Source: Chlorokybus atmophyticus
Taxonomy: Eukaryota > Plantae > Mesostigma and Chlorokybus algae
Reading direction: 5' to 3'
Assembly: GCA_009103225.1 (NCBI GenBank)
Contig: RHPI01002533.1
Coordinates: 395,911 to 459,910 of the forward strand
DNA length: 64,000 bases
Of the stretch, positions 12,514 to 53,599 are shown in pieces. The notes under the pieces are model-generated. The model saw only the letters and a list, made by a program, of their open reading frames with translations. It did not search any database and was not told the origin of the DNA. The translations under genes were made by a program, and so were the position numbers. How positions within the stretch are numbered: the stretch's first letter is position 1; every line of letters begins with the position of its first letter.

Positions 12514-14831
12514 ATGGCTTGGGACGCTGACGCCCGGCTGACGGCGTTGGAAACCCTCGCCGCCCGCTTTGCTGCGGCCGACGAGGCGTGCCTGGCGCCC
12601 CTTGAAGCTGCCCTTCGAGAGACTGTGGACGCTAGCAGGTTGATTGCTTGTAGTGTCCTGCATTGCACTACCTGCGAGTTGCTCTTTTGAACTTGAGCTC
12701 GCCAAGTAGTAGGAGCTTGTGTAGAATTATTGCTAGTTGAAGATACGTCATGCACAGCGCAATACCATTGCTTGACTATTTGCACCCATGCACCTGCTGC
12801 CTTACGACATATATTCATTTCAAAAACATGATATGCTGTATGCGGCCACCAGCAGGCCGTCGCCTTGGTTTTTGGCTCCCTTGTCTCTGCATGCATGCTG
12901 CATCCAGTTAGATGATAGATTACTTGACGTACAGGCAGCCAGATGTGCGCACCGCACTTGCTGTAGCATCTGCACCAGCGCGCATCACGGAGCTGTTTGA
13001 GCCGCTTGCACGGCACAGCAGGTTGATGCAACTGCCAGTACAAGATCAGTCATCAAGTGGTTATGATCCACAAGCGCCTGGATACCCTTCCAATGAGGAT
13101 GACGACGATGGCTTGGCGCAATTCGTTGATAATAGAAGGTGAAGAGCGCAACATTGTATATGAACTGCAACCTTAGGCTGTATTGAAGATATTTCCTGAG
13201 TGAGAGGTACTTGCGGGTTCTGAGTTTACGTTTTTGTTGCTTGGGTATCCCAATGACAGGAAGGTTTGCGTTGCTCTCCTTTCAGTCGCAGGCTGGCTGC
13301 TGGCAAAGCCCCCATAACCTTGCGCGAGTCTGCCTTGAGACCGTTGGTCTTGCTTCTACGCCTCCTTCGCAATACGTGTGCGGGTGTTGAAGTAGCCACT
13401 GAGAAGGTTTATGCAGAACTCTCTGCGCTGGTTGAGCAGCTTGCAGTTGCGTACCGAACCGGCCACAAGGGTACTGATGTTGTCAATGCACTTCGGGCTG
13501 CAACTCAAGCAATCAGCAACCTTGCCGCAAGTTCTACGGTCAATGCGGTACGACCACTTTGCAATCCAAAACCCATACTTGTGGACACCAGCATAATGAG
13601 CGTCCACACAGGTGCTGTTATGGGTGGAGGCCAGCACATCCGCCCTTACGTCTCTGGCAGCGCTGCCGATCAGTCTGGGTCTGCATGACCCCCTTTTCAC
13701 TGCCCTGTGGAACTGCTGCCGAGATGATCCAACCAGACGACTGCAACTAGGCAGGTACCTCTTGTTGATACTGCCATGTCCCTCTTGGTTATTACAACAG
13801 GAGCATACCAATGTGTCAGTGTCAAGCAAGTGTGCACAGCAAGTTTGCAACTTGTGCCTGAACCGCGTGCCTGGTGCAGGAATGCAGAGCTAGCGCAGGC
13901 ATTGTGGAGCATCCCGTCCAATGCTTTGACAGACGGCAATGAAAATAGTGATCAGGAGGGAGTGTCAGCGGCATTGGCAGTCGTGCGGGACTGGCTGGCC
14001 GCATTGGCAAAGCTTCTGTGCGTGTCCGATTGTCTATTGCCAACGTTGTGGGTCACCCTTGGTCAGTCGCAGTCCGGCTTTTCCTCTCAACAAACCTTGC
14101 TGCTAGAGGTCAGCTCATGTTGCTAACAGTGATGGACCTGTTCTGATATCGCAGGAACTTGATTTCACCTCTTTTGCATGCAGGAGCTGGCGACTGTTGT
14201 GCAAGCTCTACAAGACGATGCTGAGTCTCTTACACCCGAGACGAAAGCATTCCTTCTGGCAGTCACAGAAGCGGCCGCTGCAGCGGTTGCAAAGCAGGAG
14301 CAGAATGCGCTGGCAGTCCTTCAAGCCAGTTTGCAGCTGCTGAGAACAGTCAGCATGACGCGTGACGATCCTGGCTGCCGGATTGCAGTGGTTCTGCTGT
14401 TGCTGCAGTTGTTGCGGTCTCTTCCTCCACCAGCGCGCGCCCAACCTGCTGATGCGCCACCGTCAACATCACTGCCCACCAAGTACCCCACATCCAACTT
14501 GTACCCGGGTTACAGACGTGACATTGTGGCTGTGCTGGGTAATGCGTGCTTCGGTCAACCTGCGGCGCAGCAGGCCGTGCGTGATGCGGATGGGCTGATG
14601 CTTATCCTGCAGCATTGCGTCGTTGACGATGAGAATCCGTATCTCAGAGAGTGGGGTCTGTGGGCGGTTCGGAACCTCTGCGAGGATCCGGAGAACCGCC
14701 GGCAGATAGCTGAATTGGAGGTGCAGGGTCCTGTCCAGAGCAGCGAGTTGCAGAAAGCTCAATTGGAGATCGTGATTGACGAGGTAACCAAAAGACCACG
14801 TCTTAAGAACACATCAACAGCTCCAGATTGA
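12514..14831 (+). CDS. ATXN10: Ataxin-10 homolog (ARM-like)
   Basis: Last exon YPGYRRDIVAVLGNAC...QHCVVDDENPYLREWGLWAVRNLCE is the ataxin-10 C-terminal domain; upstream helical exons from ATG 12514. Confidence 0.88.
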
Positions 14832-24982: not shown

Positions 24983-26940
24983 ATGGCCGGCAGCGGCGGC
25001 GGTCGGCTCCGTGCTGCTGTCAGCTGGCTGCTGGTTTCTCTGCTTGTTGCGTTGCCAGCTGTAGCTCGAGCGCGCGTCACTCACAGTCGCATTCGCCGGG
25101 ATGACAGGGCGATCATCCTGTTCGACAGGTGCGTTCAATGTGTGTGTCCTTGCGCAACATTCATGCTTGATGTTGCTTATTTGCCAACCCACTCAGTCAA
25201 CGTCTCTGGGAGATGTTAGTCGTTCTTCGTCAGGCTATAGCGCATGCATGCTAGCATGCTTTACCAACCAGCAGGCATGCATTGGCTGCTGTTGTTGTTG
25301 TGCTGCATTGCTTCTTCTCAGTTTATCATTGGAAATGCATGCTGTATCGCTTGCCGTTGACAGCTCCTTGTCTTTGTTTCCTTGCCAGTTTTTGTTTCTT
25401 GCCTTCGGGAGGTGTCATCGACATTTCCATACCGTATCACGAGCTGCTCTTGCCTACACCGCAACCGGCGGTGATCGACAAGAGCCGGCTGGGGTTTTTC
25501 CTGGCAGATCCAGAGGAAGAAGCGCAGCTGGACCTGGCGTTGCACAATCATGTTTGCGTTCTCAAAGACCGCCATGTGCACCTGCTCTTCACATGGGAAG
25601 ATGTGAGTGATACTCGCGATTTTGCATAACTGCTCCACGTGCTAGTTTTGTGCTAGTGGCAATGTCATTATTGTGTTCAACACGCAAAGTTGCGTGCTTT
25701 TGCAACAACTCATGTTGATCTGGTGGTTGTGTAGATTGATGCGGTACAAAGGAATGAAACGTTTCGGTTCTACAAGCAATTGACAACTGGTGGCGATCTG
25801 CGGTTGTTTTGGGCTAACTGCCAAGGCAACTACTACGCCAGCTTTGATGTCATAACACGATTGTACAACACAAACAGCCAGGAAGTGAAGGATTTCCTGC
25901 CTGCTGGCGAGAGCGTGTTGCCTCTGCTTTACTTCCTTTGCTTTGGCACATACGTGTTGCTGGCGTTCATTTGGATACGGTTTCTAGTCGTCAAGCGAAG
26001 CGATGGCACTCACAAGATACACGTGCTCATGGCGGTGTTGGTTGTGCTCCGAGCGTTGACCGCTGTATCCCAGGTGAGCAGCGATGCTGCATGCGTGCAA
26101 GTGTTGTTGCAGTTTTGGTTGGGTTTGGCAGTAGCATTAATGATTGATGCCTTATGTTCGTTGTTGCTCATAACTGTCTGTGGTGTGCAGGCTGGCATGT
26201 ATCAATGGGTTAAAACAACAGGCAATGCATCCGGTTGGAACATTGCATTCTACATATTCTCTTTCTTCCGTGGTGTCATGCTGTTTGTTGTCATTGTGCT
26301 CGTGGGCACTGGATGGTCCTTCTTAAAGCCCTATCTCCAAAGCAGAGAGAAGCGAGTGCTAGTGTTTGTCATCCCCCTGCAGGTATGACATTCAGTTGGC
26401 ATGCAGTGTATGCATGTTGCTCATGCATGTGTCTCACTGTACCCAGATGCATTACTGTCAATATTACTTGCAGTGTTGATGTTTGGTCTTCATGGTCTGC
26501 AGGTGTTTGCCAATGTTGCAGTGGTAGTTCTAGACGAGACCAACATGAGCTCCAAGGCATGGTTTACGTGGCGAGACCTGTTTCACTTAGTCGACATCAT
26601 CTGCTGCTGCGCGATCCTCTTCCCCATAGTCTGGTCAATCAAGCATCTGCGAGAAGCGGCCGAGGCCGACGGCAAGGCGGCCACAAACCTGCAGAAGCTA
26701 GTGCTGTTTAGGCAGTTTTACGTGGTGGCCGTGGGCTACATCTACTCCACGAGGATAGTGGTGTACCTGCTGGAGAGTACCACCCCTTGCGAGCTCGCAT
26801 GGTTCAGCATGTTTGCCTCGGAGGCCGTCACCATGGCGTTCTATCTTTTTGTGGGTTTCAAGTTCAGGCCCGCCAGCGACAATCCTTACTTTCACGCGGA
26901 AGAAGAGCACCAACCGTTGGTTCATGCAGAGGAGCTCTGA
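24983..26940 (+). CDS. GPR107/GPR108-like (lung seven-TM / GOST family) protein
   Basis: Signal peptide, lumenal domain (IILFDR, LFWANC), LPAGESVLP, seven hydrophobic helices, GTGWSFLKPYL, CCCAILFPIVWSIKHLREA, FRQFY, FRPASDNPYF. Confidence 0.93.
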
Positions 26941-28984: not shown

Positions 28985-31655
28985 TCACTGGTGTTCTACT
29001 TGCAACGCCATGTACCTACCTGACAAGTTACTCCTCATAGCAGCGGGCACCTCACCGCTAAATCTGGAAACCTGCCGTGGGCTAGATGCAACATGTTCTT
29101 CTGCTGCCAGCCGAGCAGGAGCTGCAGTTGTTCCACCACTTGGCCAGATTCTTGACATGGGCAGCGGGGTGAGTGGCACTTCTTCATCCGTGATTACCCT
29201 GCCGCTATTGGTGCGACTATGGCAAGCACGCAATGCAGTGGCCGCGTCCGCACTCTGTGCGGGACTCGCAACAACACGTCGCGGGCTGAAGGGCATTTCT
29301 TCATCCGGTATCACCCTGTCGCTGTTGGTGCGATTGTGGCGCACGAGCGGGGCTGTTGCTGCGTCCATAGTTTGCGCGGGACTCGCACTCGCTCCGGCGC
29401 GCGACACTGTCGCACCAGCGAGCTCACCAGGATTGCTGCCTTCATCGCTGTCCAGGTTGGCCCACAGGCAGCAGATGGAGGCTTGGATGTACAGCACGAG
29501 AATGTACCAAAAGGCTGCTGTGACCCAATCACGCTGCCACTGGTCGCCGTAGAAGTCGAGCACGTGGTAGTACATCGAGTACGCTGACCAGACAAGGGAC
29601 GCAAAGAAGGCGGATACCAACACGACGGAAAAGTGCTCGTAGCGCGCCAGCTCTCCAAACTTGCGCTCCTGTTGAGATACAATTAGCTATCCACAAGCAG
29701 CGGCTGACAATGGTTGGGACACGTACGCAATAACAGGCGCTCACCATGCGCAGGCGAAGAAGTGTTCTCCGCAGAGCAGATGCTGTCAACGAGAGGAAAA
29801 TCACGTCCAACAACACCACGGGGAACACCCAATAGACGCCTAGCAGAGACAGGCTGTCATCGAGCGCCACCAAGTCCGACATGAAGGCCTCAGCCAAGAA
29901 GTAAATGGTCGCCAGTGTGGCGATCTGTGCAGGTAATTTGTCAATGCAACTGCTGACACGCGGCGCAGCCAGAATAATTCTTCTGCAAGGCCATGCGTAC
30001 ACGTACCGGTCCAGGTAGGTTTTCCGGAACTGGGGCGATGCATGTGGGCCAGCCCAATGCCAATGCAACCAGCAGGACGTGCTGCAGGGCCTTGCGAGCA
30101 GACGAGATAATCTCTGCAGTAAGTGCGACAATGGAAGGCAAGTCGCCCTTCTTGTTGTAGACGGTGTATGTGCAACACCACAGCGTTATCTGCGCATCAA
30201 CGACTTGAGACCTTCATCACTGCAAGCAGGGGACACACTCGCACACCCACAAACACATCCTAATCAACTGATCTGCACCTCAACCAGCGTGAGCAGCAGT
30301 ATAGCTCCGACGCAGCTGCGCAACATCCGCCCCTGACGCCATCTTACAATGCTCGTCACAAACCATGCTATGCAGAGGGCACCATACCTGCAGCCACCAA
30401 GCATTCTTAGGTGAGTAAACTTCCGTGTCATCCTGCAATTCAATGCATTTGCTCACGATACAACCAGCAGCCTTGTTTCAAACTTACAGTGCAGCCATTA
30501 TTTTGAAAAATGGTAATATGGGTATCAGCATGCCGGGCAGAAAGCCTGAAGGGTTCTTCCAAACAGTAGAGCCCTCGAGCCTGACATCACCAGAGCAAGA
30601 AACAAACCACAAGTAGTACATGCCCGTCTCCGTAATAAACACCGATTGCTCATTATTGACATCTGCGCCGTCTGCGCAGGTGCGTGAAGTCAACGACAGG
30701 CTGGGCACGCGACTGCCTCACCCAAGTCCATAACTTCACACGAGCTTACCGCTGGCTGTCACTTGGAACTCCAGCACTCTTGGCCAATCAGCATGACTAG
30801 AACCGTTGCGCGGCTTCCAGATGAGCGACCCAGGAGTGCAACCCAACACCTGTCAACATAAATGCAAGTTTGCAGCCTGTCAAAACAGTATCCTATGCAC
30901 AATTCACGGACTGTTCAGTACCTGGCTGAGCCCCCAGTTGCAGCATACACTTCGCATTGACATAAACCCCTTTTCGTTCTCATCTTGGTAACCGATCAAG
31001 TCGTAGTCTTTTGCCTCAAACAAAACAGCTTGCACTGTGGATCCAACAGAGGCAGCTATGTCCTCGGACAGCCCAGGTTCAAACTGTATGTCCTTGAATC
31101 TAATATTGACAACAACATTTAATGAGCATGATGGACAGCATGCGCAGCCAGATATCGCTGCCACTACCTTCACCTTATATATGATCTGCCGTTGTTCACT
31201 GCAGCATATGTCCACCACTGCCAACCCGGACCAGGTTCATCGACTCGTGACGCAAACACTCCTTCCCGCCCACCCATAAACATCCACGCATCCACAACCT
31301 GGACACCCGAGCACAGCGTGTGAAAGCTGCAACAAGCAGCAAGCCAATCCGCGTGCGGCAACTACAGCCGTCTGCTCTGTGATGACGGCCACTCACTGCT
31401 AACAAGCACTGTGACCAGGCTCAAAGCTACTGTTGGTAATGCGCAACGTGTGTTGACAAACAATGCACTATAAAAAGTGAGAATTACGCATGGCTGCTCC
31501 AGTTGCCCCTGGGAGAAGTTACTCACATGATCGAACGTTCCGCTGTACGAGTGCACCGCAGCCGCCGCAAGGCCCAGCCCCGACAGGAGAATCAAACCGC
31601 AGAGAACAAGCGGCAATGCGAGACTGGCTGGCCACACCATGTCCACCCCGCCCAT
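28985..31655 (-). CDS. TMEM87-like (lung seven-TM / GOST family) protein
   Basis: Signal peptide (MVWPASLALPLVLCGL), lumenal domain (GREG, VCC...GC, TGMYYLWFVSC, GSTVWKNPSGFLPG), TM exons, WQRDW; long C-tail; stop at 28985. Confidence 0.87.
29165..29398 (-). repeat. Two ~117-nt (39-aa) tandem repeats in the TMEM87-like C-tail
   Basis: ASPAQTMDAATAPLVRHNRTNSDRVIPDEEMPFSP / ASPAQSADAATALRACHSRTNSGRVITDEEVPLTP; cttcatccg recurs at 29182 and 29299. Confidence 0.9.
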
Positions 31656-43682: not shown

Positions 43683-46076
<2,394 letters not shown>

Positions 46077-50301: not shown

Positions 50302-53300
50302 TCACGTCGCAACAACCGGGCTGCGCCAGCCATGATGCATATAAAACAGCTGCATGGACCTCACGATACGCGCGAAGTGATAGAACAGTTTGGACTTCTC
50401 TCCGCCGGCGATGCCCGCCTGGCCGTGACGGTTGGCCCCGGTGATGTCGCTGCAGGGGGACCCGCCGATGACGAGGTCGAAAGGCCCGTAACGCCTTAGC
50501 ACCTGCGCCACGCCGTCGTCGGTGCCCAACTTCCCCGTGATGTCGCCGTGTGGCACGAACTTGTGTTCCATGCCTTGCTGCCTGCGTGAGCATTGTGTGT
50601 GTGCATGCTCGCACATGCTCTTGGGTGTGTGCGTGTGCGCACGCGAGTGTGCCTGCGCGCATGTGTGTGCACGTGTGCGTACATGCACATGTGTAGAGAT
50701 ACACTTTGCCAGGTGTAACATAACACCACACTTTACAGTGCCTTACTTGAACCACTTTGAAACAACCTTCTGCAGATCATGGTCTTTTTCAGACGTGTGG
50801 TATGTCTTGATCTTCACCTGCACAAGAGGCAGCACGGTTCCAAGTCAATGTGCATGCGCGTTCGCCACAATCTCGAGGCTACCTACACACTGCATTCACT
50901 AACCCGCCGCCAATACATACAACATCCCACCTTAAGCTCGTGAAGGATGATGGCTGCAGCACCGATACCGTCAAACAAAGACAAGACGCTGACACCGTCC
51001 TTGAGATCAGTGGAAGAGTGGCACTTGCGTGCGAAGGGCGTGAGCAACCTAACGAAGGTTGGCACCTGAACAAGCAGCACGAGTCATTAAGCACACTCTA
51101 ATAGCTGACAAACAGGGACAGTAGTAATAGTGACAATCAGCACATGTTCCAGCTTACGCAAAAGGTTGCTCCAATTGCTTGGGTACGCCGCTTGTGTTGA
51201 AACAACGGCACGGTGTAGTGCTTGGGCAGGCCCATGATTTCCTCCACCTCAGGTAGATGCAGCGATCTGTTCGTTTATCGCACTTAAATCAATCAGTAAA
51301 TGTCATTGAGTGTCATGTGTGGCATTCTGCGCACTGTGACAGTTGGGCAGAACGCGCTGACGAGGACATGAAGCCACGATAGCAGAAGCAGCACCTGAGC
51401 GTCTGCTTGTGGTAGCACTCATCCCAGATCAGATTCTTCTCCTTAAGCGCTTTTTTTTGTTTGTCATCCAGACAGCAGCCGGGTGTCTGCAGCGCATGGG
51501 TCATTGCCTTTGCCACTGAAGGGGACTGGCACACAAGCAAATATGTTCAGCACACATGTTCAGCATGCATGAACACGCACGACGGCTATGCTGCGTTCAA
51601 GACAACGTTGACATCATTACCCCAATGTCGCTTGTAATACAATTGAACTTGCGCCTCCTGTCCCACGGCTCCCAGTTGCGACGGAGATAAGGGAACATAT
51701 CAAAGATGGTAAAATCTTCCCCACCTGTGTGACCTTCTAAGCAATATGCGCATGCAATGCTGCAAGCTTGTGCACTTAAGTGTTGGCTTTTTCTGCATGT
51801 ATTGTGTGCGTGCATGCGTGCTCTGTAGAACAACAAATGTTGTACAGCAGGGCTTACTTGGGTCCCTGCATGGTGGGCGACCCTTCCTCGGAACATCAGA
51901 TATGATGATGCGTGGCCGCCTGCAGACCGCATCGTGCATGGATTCGACCTTTTCGCACCATATTCCCGAGGCCATCTGCAGATGCAGCCTGAATTCCCTC
52001 CTCGCATCTCGGATGTGCTGTTGGTTGTTGCCGAGTACGTTCTCAAAGAGCTGCAAGCAAGCAAGTATTGTATGAATGCAAATCTGGTTTGTGATGCATG
52101 TCAAAGCATGCACACGGACACAAGGACATGGTCTTGGAACATGCAAAGGAGGCACACATCCACATTGTGGAAGGATGAGACGAACCATGTAGAATGGCAA
52201 GGGGGGAAGGTCGCTCGGCGATTCCCATGATACTGGTTCTACCCAATCTGCCTGCACGACGCGATGTGTGCGTCCGCGCGCGTGTGTGTGTATATGTGTG
52301 TGTGTGTGTGTTGTCTTGCGAGTTTCATACGTGCTTGTGTGACATTGCCTAGCAGTTCTCACCTCTACGCGCTTGCGTGTGCGGGCTTGCGTTAACCCGG
52401 CGGCAGCCGTACGCCGAGTGATTCTGCCCCCGATGCCGCGATGAAGCTTGCGAGTAGGTTGGAGACAGCAGTCATCAACATCTTGCACGCCTGTCTCTTG
52501 CCAACGTCAATAGCCAGCAAACAAATTCACATGCTCGCATGCCAACCTACAACTACACGCACGCTGCTTGCTCGCACAACCGCTTACCACTTTCATTCTC
52601 AGACTCATCTCCAATGTGGTTTGATTGCTCGTGTTGCCTCGATGCTTCAACCTCATTCTGCCTGAGGCAAGCCGGCACGTGTTCAACCAGTGCGGCAAGC
52701 GTCATCTCTTCACCGCAATAAGGACAACAACTCTTCTCTGCCTCAATGCCTTCTTGCTCAGGTTCATCTGTCCGAACCCCGCATGCAGTTAGCGCACAGT
52801 CAGGTCTTCATGCATATGTCTTCATGTGCATGAAGACATACCTTCATCGCTTGTGACAGCCGACTCGACGTCCTCAGCCTCCTCTTGCAGCTTGGCCGCA
52901 GTCTCGTTGGTGTTCCAGCATGCTGGTGCATGGTCGATGAGGTCCAGCAATGGCAACTCAACACCGCAGAACCTGCAACGCTCCCTTTCTGTCGCCTCAA
53001 CGCCCAGTTCCGGCGCAGGGGGTCGACAAACTTCAGGTTTGGGGCGAACCATTGTCAAATCGACAGGTTGCTGTTGAGCTGGCACATGCATTGAGTACTT
53101 GAAAGACCAGCAAATGTAACAACGCTTGCACGCACACGCACAAAGTAGCTACCTGTTTCTTCCTTCTCCTCCTCCTGTTGCTGCTGCTGCTGCTGTGTTG
53201 CACTGGTTTCATTCACCTGGAAGCATGCTGGTGCGTGGTCCACCAGCTCCAACACTGCCATCTCGCTCCCACAGAAGGGGCATTGCTCAGACTCCAAGCA

Positions 53301-53599
53301 GGCCTCTGAACTACCTTACGGGTGCACAACATGTGCTCTGAACATCTGCAAGAGCTCACACCTAGCAGTACAAGCAAGGGTACTAGCTTACCTTGCTCAT
53401 GTGTGCTAGTGAGCTCAGCCTGCTTGGATGTTCCAGCCTTGGTTGGTGCTGCTGGAAGTTGCGGTCGTGAGGTGGACGCCATGCACGACTGCTCTTCGGC
53501 TTGCTGCGCTGGTATGCATGGCGTGTTGTGGTCTCTCCTTTGAGCGAATGAAGGACGAAAGGCTTCGGAGCCGCCCGCTGTAGCCTTGCCGTTGCTCAT
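50302..53599 (-). CDS. DRM: DRM-type (circularly permuted) C5 cytosine methyltransferase with three N-terminal UBZ4-type zinc fingers
   Basis: Motif order VI (PLPFYM|LFENV) - VIII (RRPR) - NWEPWDRRRKFNCI - KNLIWD - IX/X (LPEVEEIMGLPKHYT...QAIGATF) - I (VSVLSLFDGIG) - IV (FDLVIGGSPC) - V (LFY). The start is the first in-frame ATG at 53599; upstream exons to ~54306 are unresolved. Confidence 0.9.

What the first reader, a model, noticed from the sequence alone, without database searches (positions are those of the whole stretch)
50302..53599. DRM-type de novo DNA methyltransferase with three UBZ4 zinc fingers instead of UBA domains
Seen: the catalytic motifs are in the permuted DRM order (VI-X before I-V) with intact ENV, RxR, FxGxG and GGSPC. 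Upstream are three repeats with exact C-x2-C-x11-H-x3-C spacing: CPFCGSEMAVLELVDHAPAC (53282-53223), CRFCGVELPLLDLIDHAPAC (52977-52918) and CPYCGEEMTLAALVEHVPAC (52726-52667). Established: that spacing is the Rad18/WRNIP1-type UBZ4 ubiquitin-binding finger, and land-plant DRM2 carries N-terminal UBA domains needed for function. Inference: an algal DRM uses an unrelated ubiquitin-binding module in the same position, i.e. convergent ubiquitin-guided targeting of de novo methylation. I do not recall this architecture being described, but could not search.
Basis: partly seen in the sequence, partly recalled or inferred. Interest (0 to 1): 0.85.

Follow-up and report, generated by a model that had tools for sequence, protein, structure and literature searches.

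The report
Early algal DRM methyltransferase with zinc fingers
This is an intact 13-exon gene for an early-branching algal relative of the plant de novo DNA methyltransferase DRM2 that carries three RAD18-like zinc fingers where land plants have UBA domains; it shows that DRM is older than some recent surveys state and hints that ubiquitin reading is its ancient targeting principle.

Summary
On the minus strand, 53599-50302 holds a clean 13-exon, 671-aa gene with GT..AG at every junction. Its catalytic motifs are in DRM order (VI-X before I-V) and all key residues are intact. Three C-x2-C-x11-H-x3-C fingers lie exactly where reported (3 seen, 0.03 expected by chance).

The de-permuted catalytic domain sits inside the DRM clade. 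It pairs with a Chlorokybus atmophyticus protein of the same architecture (four fingers), and the pair is sister to all other DRMs. Klebsormidium and one metagenome alga have one such finger ahead of DRM, in the metagenome case within a single uninterrupted ORF. Klebsormidium adds a UIM-like motif. Land plants have UBA.

The UBZ4 label is only partly supported. Spacing, predicted fold and the top structural neighbours (RAD18 and WRNIP1 UBZ) agree. No curated UBZ profile matches, and the helix Asp that binds ubiquitin in RAD18/WRNIP1 is absent from all ten fingers. Weak hits also point to TRAFD1/XAF1-type fingers, which have the same spacing.

The finger is more likely the ancestral DRM N-terminal module, later replaced by UBA, than a convergent gain. 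Ubiquitin binding is plausible (about 50%) but untested. I rate it a new variant of a known kind, not described in the literature I could search.

The parts
50302..53599 (-). Whole coding region: 13 exons, 671 aa, introns of 74-165 nt. Exons: 53599-53392, 53314-53153, 53078-52842, 52767-52588, 52490-52363, 52251-52186, 52050-51858, 51736-51621, 51525-51395, 51266-51158, 51065-50931, 50817-50747, 50581-50302.
   Evidence: Hand-built splice model with GT..AG at every junction and consistent phase. Collinear with Chlorokybus P0001 from the N-terminal motif to the C-terminus.
53392..53599 (-). Exon 1: start codon and a low-complexity N-terminus with a short motif (FRPSFAQRR, 53560-53534) shared with Chlorokybus (LPAFARR).
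   Evidence: No Pfam domain.
53153..53314 (-). Exon 2 (phase 1-1): finger 1, CCHC at 53282-53223, followed by a Q/E-rich linker.
   Evidence: 72% nucleotide identity to the finger part of exon 3 (D2).
52842..53078 (-). Exon 3 (phase 1-1): finger 2, CCHC at 52977-52918, with an acidic linker.
   Evidence: (XAF1_C, E=0.012, sub-threshold).
52588..52767 (-). Exon 4 (phase 1-1): finger 3, CCHC at 52726-52667, with an acidic linker.
   Evidence: zf-Di19, E=1.7e-4, sub-threshold. AF2 model pLDDT 89.7 with a beta-beta-alpha fold. Foldseek top hits are the RAD18 and WRNIP1 UBZ domains.
52363..52490 (-). Exon 5: basic linker (RKLHRG...RTRKR, 52452-52369), a possible nuclear localisation signal. This is the least certain exon because it has only weak homology support.
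   Evidence: The NLS reading is inference.
51858..52251 (-). Exons 6-7: the conserved strand before motif VI plus ENV (52197-52036, spanning the intron) and motif VIII RxR (51924-51904).
   Evidence: The PF(F/Y)xxFENV block runs across the exon 6/7 junction and matches all DRMs, which supports that junction.
51158..51736 (-). Exons 8-10: the target-recognition region, motif IX region (WEPWDRRRKFNC, 51674-51639) and the start of motif X. In-frame alternative acceptors exist at 51724 (exon 8) and 51516 (exon 9).
50931..51065 (-). Exon 11: the end of motif X (VPTFVRLL, DNMT3-like) joined directly to motif I (LSLFDGIGAAAI, 50984-50949). This is the permutation junction.
50302..50817 (-). Exons 12-13: motif II (50802-50782), motif III (50553-50539), motif IV with the catalytic Cys (VIGGSPCSD, 50472-50446), motif V, and the stop codon.
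   Evidence: Pfam DNA_methylase (E=6e-4) on the exon alone. DRM2 7l4h at E=4.5e-11 and NtDRM 4onj at E=1.1e-10, both at their C-termini.

Best explanation
The locus encodes an active, early-branching member of the DRM family. DRM enzymes are cytosine-5 DNA methyltransferases whose DNMT3-derived catalytic domain is circularly permuted. Shown here: one 13-exon gene; permuted motif order; all catalytic and SAM-binding residues intact; placement with Chlorokybus as sister to all other DRMs. The N-terminus is an array of three small zinc-binding beta-beta-alpha CCHC fingers. Each finger is on its own phase-1 exon, so the array grew by exon duplication, and the fingers are separated by acidic linkers. 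Inferred: this array is the chromatin-targeting module of the enzyme. It would do the job that UBA domains do in land-plant DRM2, most likely by binding ubiquitin or a ubiquitylated chromatin protein in multivalent fashion, so that the C-terminal domain methylates nearby DNA. A basic linker (a possible NLS) joins the two halves. The literature reports no Pol V subunit NRPE1 in Chlorokybus/Mesostigma-grade algae, so the enzyme would work without canonical Pol V-based RdDM. I put the architecture and DRM membership at about 0.9, the UBZ4-like fold at about 0.7 and ubiquitin as the ligand at about 0.5. The overall confidence refers to the full mechanism.
For: Gene model: GT..AG at every junction and consistent phase. 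Apart from one inside finger 3 (Met224), the first Met upstream of motif VI is Met327, which falls inside the conserved PFYM-LFENV block. An independent MTase gene therefore has no plausible start. The same finger-plus-DRM layout occurs in Chlorokybus P0001, in Klebsormidium P0239 and P0241, and in a single uninterrupted 520-aa ORF on metagenome contig L001. DRM membership: the last exon hits the C-terminus of DRM2 and NtDRM structures. P0001's MTase half covers 91-96% of land-plant DRM2 collinearly (E about 1e-54), against about 35% for DNMT3. In the tree the DRM clade has support 100/98 and window+Chlorokybus 100/98. Catalytic residues align. Fingers: 3 observed against 0.03 expected. AF2 pLDDT is 89.7 with a beta-beta-alpha fold. 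Foldseek ranks 1-3 and 5 are RAD18 and WRNIP1 UBZ, two of them solved with ubiquitin bound, at TM 0.67-0.71 and rmsd 0.8-2.0 A. RAD18 and WRNIP1 UBZ are also the best full-finger PDB profile hits. The second knuckle residue is always F, Y or V, like WRNIP1 Val22, which contacts ubiquitin Ile44 (PMC4370504). Comparative pattern: orthologues carry a finger array, a finger plus a UIM-consensus motif or UBA. DRM2 needs its UBA domains (PMC2965745).
Against: No curated UBZ profile matches any algal finger, and every Pfam finger hit is below threshold. The helix Asp used by RAD18 and WRNIP1 to bind ubiquitin (His+2) is absent from all ten fingers; it is Pro in all three window fingers. Foldseek and HMM E-values are not significant for so small a domain, and AF2 may simply reproduce the nearest fold it was trained on. 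Weak hits of equal or better strength point to TRAFD1/XAF1 TRAF-type fingers with the same spacing. The Klebsormidium UIM hits are sub-threshold (E about 0.1-0.16). The ligand of the DRM2 UBA domains is itself unknown. There is no transcript evidence for the window gene, and exon 5 lacks homology support.
Confidence: 0.5

Rival explanations
1. The architecture is as described, but the fingers do not read ubiquitin. They are TRAF/TRAFD1/XAF1-like protein-protein interaction fingers, or nucleosome- or nucleic-acid-binding fingers (Sgf73-like or C2H2-like). They would tether the enzyme to a partner protein, histone surface, DNA or RNA.
For: Window finger 1 best matches both CCHC fingers of FLN29/TRAFD1 over their full length (2d9k, E=0.025). 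Pfam XAF1_C hits finger 2 (E=0.012). A TRAFD1/XAF1-like insect protein, P0119, was the only non-self hit to the Chlorokybus N-terminus among 5.8 billion proteins (E=9e-4). The P0127 finger resembles classical DNA-binding C2H2 fingers. Sgf73 and U11-48K fingers are among the Foldseek hits. The canonical ubiquitin-binding Asp is absent, and no UBZ Pfam model matches.
Against: RAD18 and WRNIP1 UBZ rank above all of these structurally, and 2d9k is not in the top 50. Orthologues place recognised ubiquitin-binding modules (a UIM-like motif, UBA) at the same N-terminal position. All the competing hits are also below threshold.
Confidence: 0.35
2. Gene-model artefact: the finger exons (1-4) belong to a separate upstream gene and the methyltransferase is its own gene.
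For: No RNA evidence was available. Exon 5, which links the two halves, has little homology support.
Against: The same fusion is annotated in Chlorokybus and Klebsormidium and exists as one uninterrupted ORF in L001. Phases are consistent and every junction is canonical. There is no usable in-frame start for a stand-alone MTase. The last Chlorokybus finger shares the HAPAC ending with the window fingers, and the extreme N-terminal motif is conserved.
Confidence: 0.05
3. The gene is a catalytically dead regulatory paralogue (DRM3-like) or a decaying pseudogene.
For: The window protein has the longest terminal branch among the finger-DRMs in the tree (1.13 changes per site). Motif X reads GATFC instead of GNSFQ.
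Against: The reading frame is open across 13 exons. The motif IV Pro-Cys, motif VI ENV, motif VIII RxR, motif I FxGxG, the motif II Glu and the motif III Asp are all intact. DRM3 is defined by mutated catalytic motifs (PMC2965745). The motif X variant is shared with Chlorokybus and resembles DNMT3.
Confidence: 0.05

Closest known systems
Land-plant DRM2 (DOMAINS REARRANGED METHYLTRANSFERASE 2; structures 7l4h, 4onj)
   Same: Circularly permuted DNMT3-type catalytic domain (VI-X then I-V) at the C-terminus, intact catalytic residues, a non-catalytic N-terminal targeting region, and the same clade in the tree.
   Different: The N-terminus has three CCHC zinc fingers and no UBA. The region after motif X (VPTFVRLL) resembles DNMT3 rather than land-plant VDTVAYHL. 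It is the earliest-branching lineage, from an alga of a grade reported to lack Pol V.
Chlorokybus atmophyticus protein Chlat1 Chrsp1S03088 (P0001)
   Same: Nearest relative: 43% identity over the catalytic domain. It has an N-terminal array of CCHC fingers with acidic linkers, a shared extreme N-terminal motif, and a last finger ending in HAPAC.
   Different: It has four fingers rather than three. Three of them are of a PCEFC...HQxxC subtype, so the arrays expanded independently. No name or function is attached to it in the source.
Klebsormidium nitens KFL_001420175 (P0239) and metagenome P0127
   Same: A permuted DRM domain preceded by an N-terminal CCHC finger.
   Different: They have a single finger with a 12- or 13-residue spacer. 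Klebsormidium adds a UIM-consensus motif. They branch after the window/Chlorokybus pair.
RAD18 / WRNIP1 UBZ4 ubiquitin-binding zinc finger (2mre, 5vf0, 3vht)
   Same: CCHC ligands with C-x2-C-x11-H-x3-C spacing, a beta-beta-alpha fold, a hydrophobic second knuckle residue, and the best structural and full-finger profile matches.
   Different: No Pfam UBZ match. The ubiquitin-contacting Asp at His+2 is replaced (Pro in the window fingers). The context is a DNA methyltransferase, not a DNA-damage-tolerance protein. Ubiquitin binding is untested.
TRAFD1 (FLN29) / XAF1 TRAF-type zinc fingers (2d9k; Pfam PF21366, PF18608)
   Same: Identical CCHC spacing, tandem arrays, and weak but repeated sequence hits.
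   Different: All hits are below curated thresholds, these fingers are not among the top structural neighbours, and the protein context is unrelated.
Animal and plant DNMT3
   Same: Homologous catalytic domain and a de novo-type enzyme. The motif X region resembles DNMT3.
   Different: DNMT3 has canonical motif order, a separate clade (100/99), and PWWP/ADD or DUF3444 companion domains.

Membership tests
DRM (domains rearranged methyltransferase) | Catalytic motifs VI-X precede I-V in one polypeptide | tested here: met
   ENV at aa 330-332, RxR at 371-374, motif X at 505-518, then FDGIG at 541-545 and GGSPC at 618-622. The blast halves are in permuted order, as in 46 relatives.
DRM (domains rearranged methyltransferase) | Groups with DRMs, apart from DNMT3, in a phylogeny of the de-permuted domain | tested here: met
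   DRM clade 100/98 including the window protein; DNMT3 clade 100/99; rooted on bacterial-type C5 MTases. The relative P0001 is collinear with DRM2 over 91-96%.
DRM (domains rearranged methyltransferase) | Intact catalytic residues (as in DRM2, unlike DRM3) | tested here: met
   Motif IV Pro-Cys, ENV, RxR, FxGxG, motif II Glu and motif III Asp all align.
DRM (domains rearranged methyltransferase) | N-terminal UBA domains | tested here: not met
   No UBA hit on any exon, even at E up to 10. Land-plant relatives do hit UBA. UBA is typical of land-plant DRMs but is not the feature that names the family.
DRM (domains rearranged methyltransferase) | De novo, siRNA/Pol V-guided CHH methylation | not testable with these tools
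   This needs biochemistry and genetics. The literature reports no NRPE1 in Chlorokybus or Mesostigma (10.1101/2024.01.20.576478).
UBZ4 (RAD18/WRNIP1-type ubiquitin-binding zinc finger) | CCHC zinc ligands with C-x2-C-x(about 11)-H-x3-C spacing | tested here: met
   Three exact matches in the window. Relatives have spacers of 11, 12 or 13. The spacing is shared with TRAF-type fingers, so it is not exclusive to UBZ4.
UBZ4 (RAD18/WRNIP1-type ubiquitin-binding zinc finger) | Beta-beta-alpha fold that superposes on solved UBZ4 domains | tested here: inconclusive
   AF2 pLDDT 89.7. The top Foldseek hits are RAD18 and WRNIP1 UBZ (TM 0.67-0.71, probability 0.96-0.98), but the E-values are 0.3-0.6. 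The fold is generic and the model is a prediction.
UBZ4 (RAD18/WRNIP1-type ubiquitin-binding zinc finger) | Match to a curated family profile (Pfam zf_UBZ and relatives) | tested here: not met
   No UBZ family was listed for any window or algal finger. zf_UBZ did score on the control insect protein P0119.
UBZ4 (RAD18/WRNIP1-type ubiquitin-binding zinc finger) | Ubiquitin-contacting residues: a hydrophobic knuckle residue and the helix Asp (WRNIP1 Val22, Asp37) | tested here: not met
   The knuckle residue is F, Y or V in 10 of 10 fingers (met). His+2 is P,P,P,R,S,R,P,K,T,S and never Asp (not met) (residues from PMC4370504).
UBZ4 (RAD18/WRNIP1-type ubiquitin-binding zinc finger) | Binds ubiquitin | not testable with these tools
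   This needs pull-down, ITC or NMR.
TRAF-type / TRAFD1-XAF1 zinc finger | Match to curated profiles (PF21366, PF18608, PF02176) | tested here: inconclusive
   XAF1_C at E=0.012, below its cut-off. FLN29 2d9k at E=0.025. P0119 at E=9e-4 to the Chlorokybus fingers. None reaches a curated threshold.
Di19 / RNF125-type zinc finger (PF05605) | Full two-finger domain above Pfam's gathering score | tested here: not met
   18-22 bits against a cut-off of 27.5, and only profile positions 4-22 of 54 are matched.
Canonical DNMT3 | Motifs I-X in canonical order, with PWWP/ADD or DUF3444 companions | tested here: not met
   The order is permuted, the protein lies outside the DNMT3 clade, and no such domains were found.

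The most novel reading that the evidence does not exclude
Reading ubiquitin is the ancestral and conserved targeting principle of the whole DRM family and predates Pol IV/V-based RdDM. It would have been implemented in turn by UBZ-like finger arrays (Chlorokybus-grade algae and this window), by a finger plus a UIM (Klebsormidium), and by UBA domains (land plants). If so, the unknown ligand of the DRM2 UBA domains is a ubiquitylated chromatin mark that has been conserved since the earliest streptophytes.
Probability: 0.35. Interest if true: 0.8.

Novelty: new variant of a known kind. Interest (0 to 1): 0.65.

Why it matters
Three points follow.

1. A bona fide permuted DRM exists in the deepest streptophyte lineage (this window and Chlorokybus). 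That contradicts a recent statement that Chlorokybus and Mesostigma lack DRM and that DRM arose together with Pol V in Klebsormidiophyceae and Charophyceae. The domain rearrangement therefore predates the RdDM polymerases.

2. The N-terminal module of DRM has been swapped during evolution. The modules found at that position are all ubiquitin-binding or look it (UBZ-like finger, UIM-like motif, UBA). This gives a concrete, testable hypothesis for a question open since 2010, namely what the essential UBA domains of DRM2 recognise.

3. The small, repeated, exon-encoded fingers are easy to express, mutate and swap into DRM2 for complementation tests.

Tried and rejected
- The full spliced protein has no reference and could not be sent to the shared tools, so exons were searched separately. 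Exons of 36-64 aa gave no Pfam hits on their own.
- A profile of the three window fingers against the PDB gave nothing significant.
- The whole-protein word search with P0001 was swamped by acidic low-complexity words. It was repeated on the MTase region.
- No contig is on record for P0001, so Chlorokybus intron positions could not be compared.
- A metagenome scan with the C-terminal catalytic segment returned 80 loci. All 29 permuted loci were land-plant or bryophyte-type with no genuine upstream finger, apart from L001, which was already known. One locus, L041, is labelled as a human-gut metagenome contig and was left out of the local screen.
- The clusters of P0002 and P0003, the next-best hits to the last exon, are ordinary land-plant-type DRMs.
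- A retrotransposon-borne DNMT, as described for a Klebsormidium DNMT3, was rejected. The gene has 12 introns, no flanking long repeats within 20 kb, and ordinary neighbouring genes.
- The window's organism could not be named. Its own protein is absent from the searched collections. Introns of 74-165 nt do not fit the 1.1-kb mean reported for Mesostigma viride. I call it only a streptophyte alga of the Chlorokybus/Mesostigma grade.
- The window is not human.
Full report
**Observation.**

The minus strand between 53599 and 50302 shows open frames alternating in a way that fits a multi-exon eukaryotic gene. I required GT..AG boundaries and consistent phase. That gave a 13-exon, 2016-nt coding sequence for 671 aa, with introns of 74-165 nt.

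The three 20-residue fingers lie exactly at 53282-53223, 52977-52918 and 52726-52667. They are the only C-x2-C-x11-H-x3-C matches in all six frames of the window, against 0.03 expected from shuffles. They share further invariant residues around the zinc ligands. Each finger has its own exon (exons 2, 3 and 4), and all three exons are phase 1-1. Exons 2 and 3 keep 72% nucleotide identity over 67 nt. The array therefore grew by tandem exon duplication.

**The catalytic half.**

Motif order is VI (ENV), VIII (RxR), IX, X, then I (FDGIG), II, III, IV (GGSPC), V. The last exon alone matches the C-terminal end of the solved DRM2 (7l4h, E=4.5e-11) and tobacco DRM (4onj) catalytic domains. It matches DNMT3A and DNMT3B more weakly, and near the N-terminus of their domains. 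That difference is what a permuted enzyme should give.

A scan of 1.84 billion representative proteins with this exon found one close relative, P0001 (694 aa, 48% identity over the whole exon, located at its own C-terminus). P0001 is Chlorokybus atmophyticus Chlat1 Chrsp1S03088. Its MTase half covers 91-96% of land-plant DRM2 collinearly (E about 1e-54), against about 35% of animal DNMT3.

Among the fetched relatives in which both halves were detectable, 46 are permuted and 2 are canonical.

I de-permuted the domain and aligned 43 sequences. The maximum-likelihood tree was rooted on three bacterial-type C5 methyltransferases. It gives a DNMT3 clade (100/99) and a DRM clade (100/98). Inside the DRM clade, window+Chlorokybus (100/98) is sister to everything else (99/94). 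Next come metagenome P0127 and Klebsormidium P0239, and then Klebsormidium P0242 with the land-plant DRMs (99/97). The unnamed deep land-plant rows proved to be Ceratodon, Marchantia MpDRMb, Psilotum and Adiantum. The gene tree therefore follows the streptophyte species tree.

All residues needed for catalysis and SAM binding align, so this is not a DRM3-like dead paralogue. After motif X, the window and Chlorokybus proteins read VPTF/LVRLLxP. That resembles DNMT3 (VPVIRHLxxPL) more than land-plant DRM (VDTVAYHLSVL) and fits an early-branching form.

**Is it one gene?**

No transcript data were available, so this rests on four lines of evidence.
- Chlorokybus has the same layout (four fingers). 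Its extreme N-terminal motif is conserved with the window protein, and its last finger ends in HAPAC as the window fingers do.
- Klebsormidium nitens KFL_001420175 and a Logan-assembly relative begin with one such finger.
- P0127 is a single uninterrupted 520-aa ORF on a 50.7-kb metagenome contig. Its finger is at residue 9 and the permuted domain follows. This shows the fusion without any splicing inference.
- In the window, the only Met between finger 3 and motif VI falls inside the conserved PFYM-LFENV block, so a stand-alone MTase gene has no plausible start.

Exon 5, a basic linker, is the least certain exon. Two in-frame alternative acceptors exist, at 51724 and 51516.

The gene has 12 introns, no flanking long repeats and ordinary neighbours (an ataxin-10 homologue and GOST-type 7TM fragments). 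It is therefore not a transposon-borne methyltransferase.

**What are the fingers?**

Pfam assigns no algal finger to any family at threshold. The hits are zf-Di19 (E=1.7e-4 to 3e-3, only the first 19 profile positions), RNF220, XAF1_C and zf-C2HC_2. The zf_UBZ model never appears, although it does score on a control insect protein.

A profile of all ten algal fingers against PDB sequences first returns proteins that match only the CxxCG knuckle. The best matches that span the whole finger are RAD18 UBZ (2mre and 5vf0, E about 0.09) and WRNIP1 UBZ (3vhs, E=0.17).

Window finger 1 alone best matches both fingers of FLN29/TRAFD1 (2d9k, E=0.025), which have the identical spacing. A TRAFD1/XAF1-like insect protein was the only non-self hit to the Chlorokybus N-terminus. 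The spacing is therefore not exclusive to UBZ4.

An AF2 model of window finger 3 is confident (pLDDT 89.7) and shows two short strands and a 20-residue helix. Among about 350,000 PDB chains, its nearest neighbours are RAD18 UBZ bound to ubiquitin (5vf0: TM 0.71, rmsd 0.9 A), RAD18 UBZ (2mrf), WRNIP1 UBZ bound to ubiquitin (3vht: TM 0.71, rmsd 0.8 A) and WRNIP1 UBZ (3vhs). These rank ahead of the U11-48K, Sgf73, classical C2H2, TAX1BP1, TRAF6 and NEMO fingers. No E-value is significant for so small a domain.

In RAD18/WRNIP1-type UBZ, ubiquitin is contacted by the Pro-Val of the knuckle and by a helix Asp (WRNIP1 Asp37) (PMC4370504). From my own knowledge of the WRNIP1 sequence, that Asp lies two residues after the zinc-binding His. 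In all ten algal fingers the second knuckle residue is hydrophobic (F, Y or V). The His+2 position is never Asp; it is Pro in all three window fingers.

My verdict is that the fingers are UBZ4-like in ligand spacing and predicted fold, but they are not demonstrable members of the family.

**Ubiquitin link from comparison.**

Land-plant DRMs carry UBA domains. These are essential for DRM2 function, and their ligand is unknown (PMC2965745).

In Klebsormidium the finger is followed by EDDQLxLAIAHSLQxEF, which fits the UIM consensus. It is conserved between two diverged sequences. It gives weak Pfam UIM and UIM_2 hits (E=0.1-0.16). A consensus regex found only one other match among 312 fetched proteins.

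So three different module types occupy the same N-terminal position in orthologues, and each is either ubiquitin-binding or looks it. This pattern is the main reason I rate ubiquitin binding by the fingers at about one half, despite the missing Asp.

The finger is on both deepest branches. It is therefore more parsimoniously the ancestral DRM N-terminal module, later replaced by UBA, than a convergent gain.

**Literature.**

Yaari et al. 2019 separate DRM from DNMT3 and include charophytes. Sarre et al. 2025 state that DRM is restricted to streptophytes, including many unicellular charophytes.

A 2024 study on SPT6L states that Chlorokybus and Mesostigma contain no DRM orthologue and that DRM first appears in Klebsormidiophyceae and Charophyceae. 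A 2022 preprint lists a Mesostigma DRM2 orthologue in passing. The window gene and P0001 show that a permuted DRM exists at that grade.

None of the papers I could search describes zinc fingers or a UIM on algal DRMs. Figures and supplements were not examined.

**Organism and limits.**

The window's own protein is not in the searched collections. Its nearest relative is Chlorokybus, at 43% identity over the catalytic domain. The short introns do not fit the mean reported for Mesostigma viride. I describe the source only as a streptophyte alga near the base of the lineage. The window is not human.

A metagenome scan found no further finger-DRM lineage. One locus labelled as a human-gut metagenome contig was left out of the local screen.

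Sampling of Chara, Coleochaete and Zygnematophyceae is missing, so the point at which UBA replaced the finger is not fixed.

**Verdict.**

The feature is real, and the gene model and DRM assignment are sound. The UBZ4 label is a reasonable structural analogy but not a shown membership. Ubiquitin-guided targeting is a plausible, testable inference. This is a new variant of a known kind, with moderate to high interest.

Noticed in passing
P0239 aa 80-97 and P0241 aa 105-122 (Klebsormidium nitens DRM-like proteins): A UIM-consensus motif (EDDQLxLAIAHSLQxEF) sits about 60 residues after the single N-terminal CCHC finger. Pfam UIM and UIM_2 hits are weak (E=0.1-0.16). It is a third kind of putative ubiquitin-binding element on a DRM N-terminus.
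   Followed up: partly
Literature versus P0001 and window 50302-53599: A 2024 paper (10.1101/2024.01.20.576478, also PMC10991848) states that Chlorokybus and Mesostigma have no DRM orthologue. Chlorokybus Chrsp1S03088 and the window gene are clearly permuted DRMs that branch at the base of the family.
   Followed up: yes
window 53560-53534 (aa 14-22) and P0001 aa 17-24: A short motif at the extreme N-terminus (FRPSFAQRR versus LPAFARR) is conserved between the window protein and Chlorokybus, within otherwise unalignable low-complexity sequence. Its function is unknown.
   Followed up: no
window 51175-51042 (motif X and the permutation junction): The segment after motif X (VPTFVRLLTPF) resembles the C-terminal helix of DNMT3 (VPVIRHLFAPL) more than land-plant DRM (VDTVAYHLSVL). 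It looks like a relic of the ancestral DNMT3 C-terminus now joined to motif I.
   Followed up: partly
window 44146-44990: A GA/TC dinucleotide microsatellite of about 850 bp, containing at least one N. It creates spurious long ORFs on the minus strand.
   Followed up: no
window 52340-52270 and 50720-50600 (introns 5 and 12 of the gene): CA/TG-rich low-complexity tracts lie inside introns. TRF reports a 20-nt period array at 50627-50679.
   Followed up: no
window 14178-14828 (+): An exon-sized ORF with a strong ataxin-10 homology domain (PF09759, E=1e-28). It is an ordinary eukaryotic neighbour gene.
   Followed up: no
window 25780-26385 (+) and 28988-29623 (-): Two ORFs on opposite strands each match part of the GOST seven-transmembrane domain (PF06814). 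They may be two genes, or an inverted duplicate.
   Followed up: no
P0119 (Hyposmocoma kahamanoa TRAFD1/XAF1-like protein), aa about 545-620: Two C-terminal fingers (PCEFCG...L..HQ..C) are strikingly like the Chlorokybus DRM fingers. This hints that the algal fingers and the C-terminal TRAFD1/XAF1 fingers may be distant kin.
   Followed up: partly
P0022 (Brassica campestris UniRef M4CJK4, 814 aa): A DRM with UBA domains is fused to a C-terminal class I SAM methyltransferase domain (Methyltransf_11). This is probably a gene-model fusion in the source annotation.
   Followed up: no
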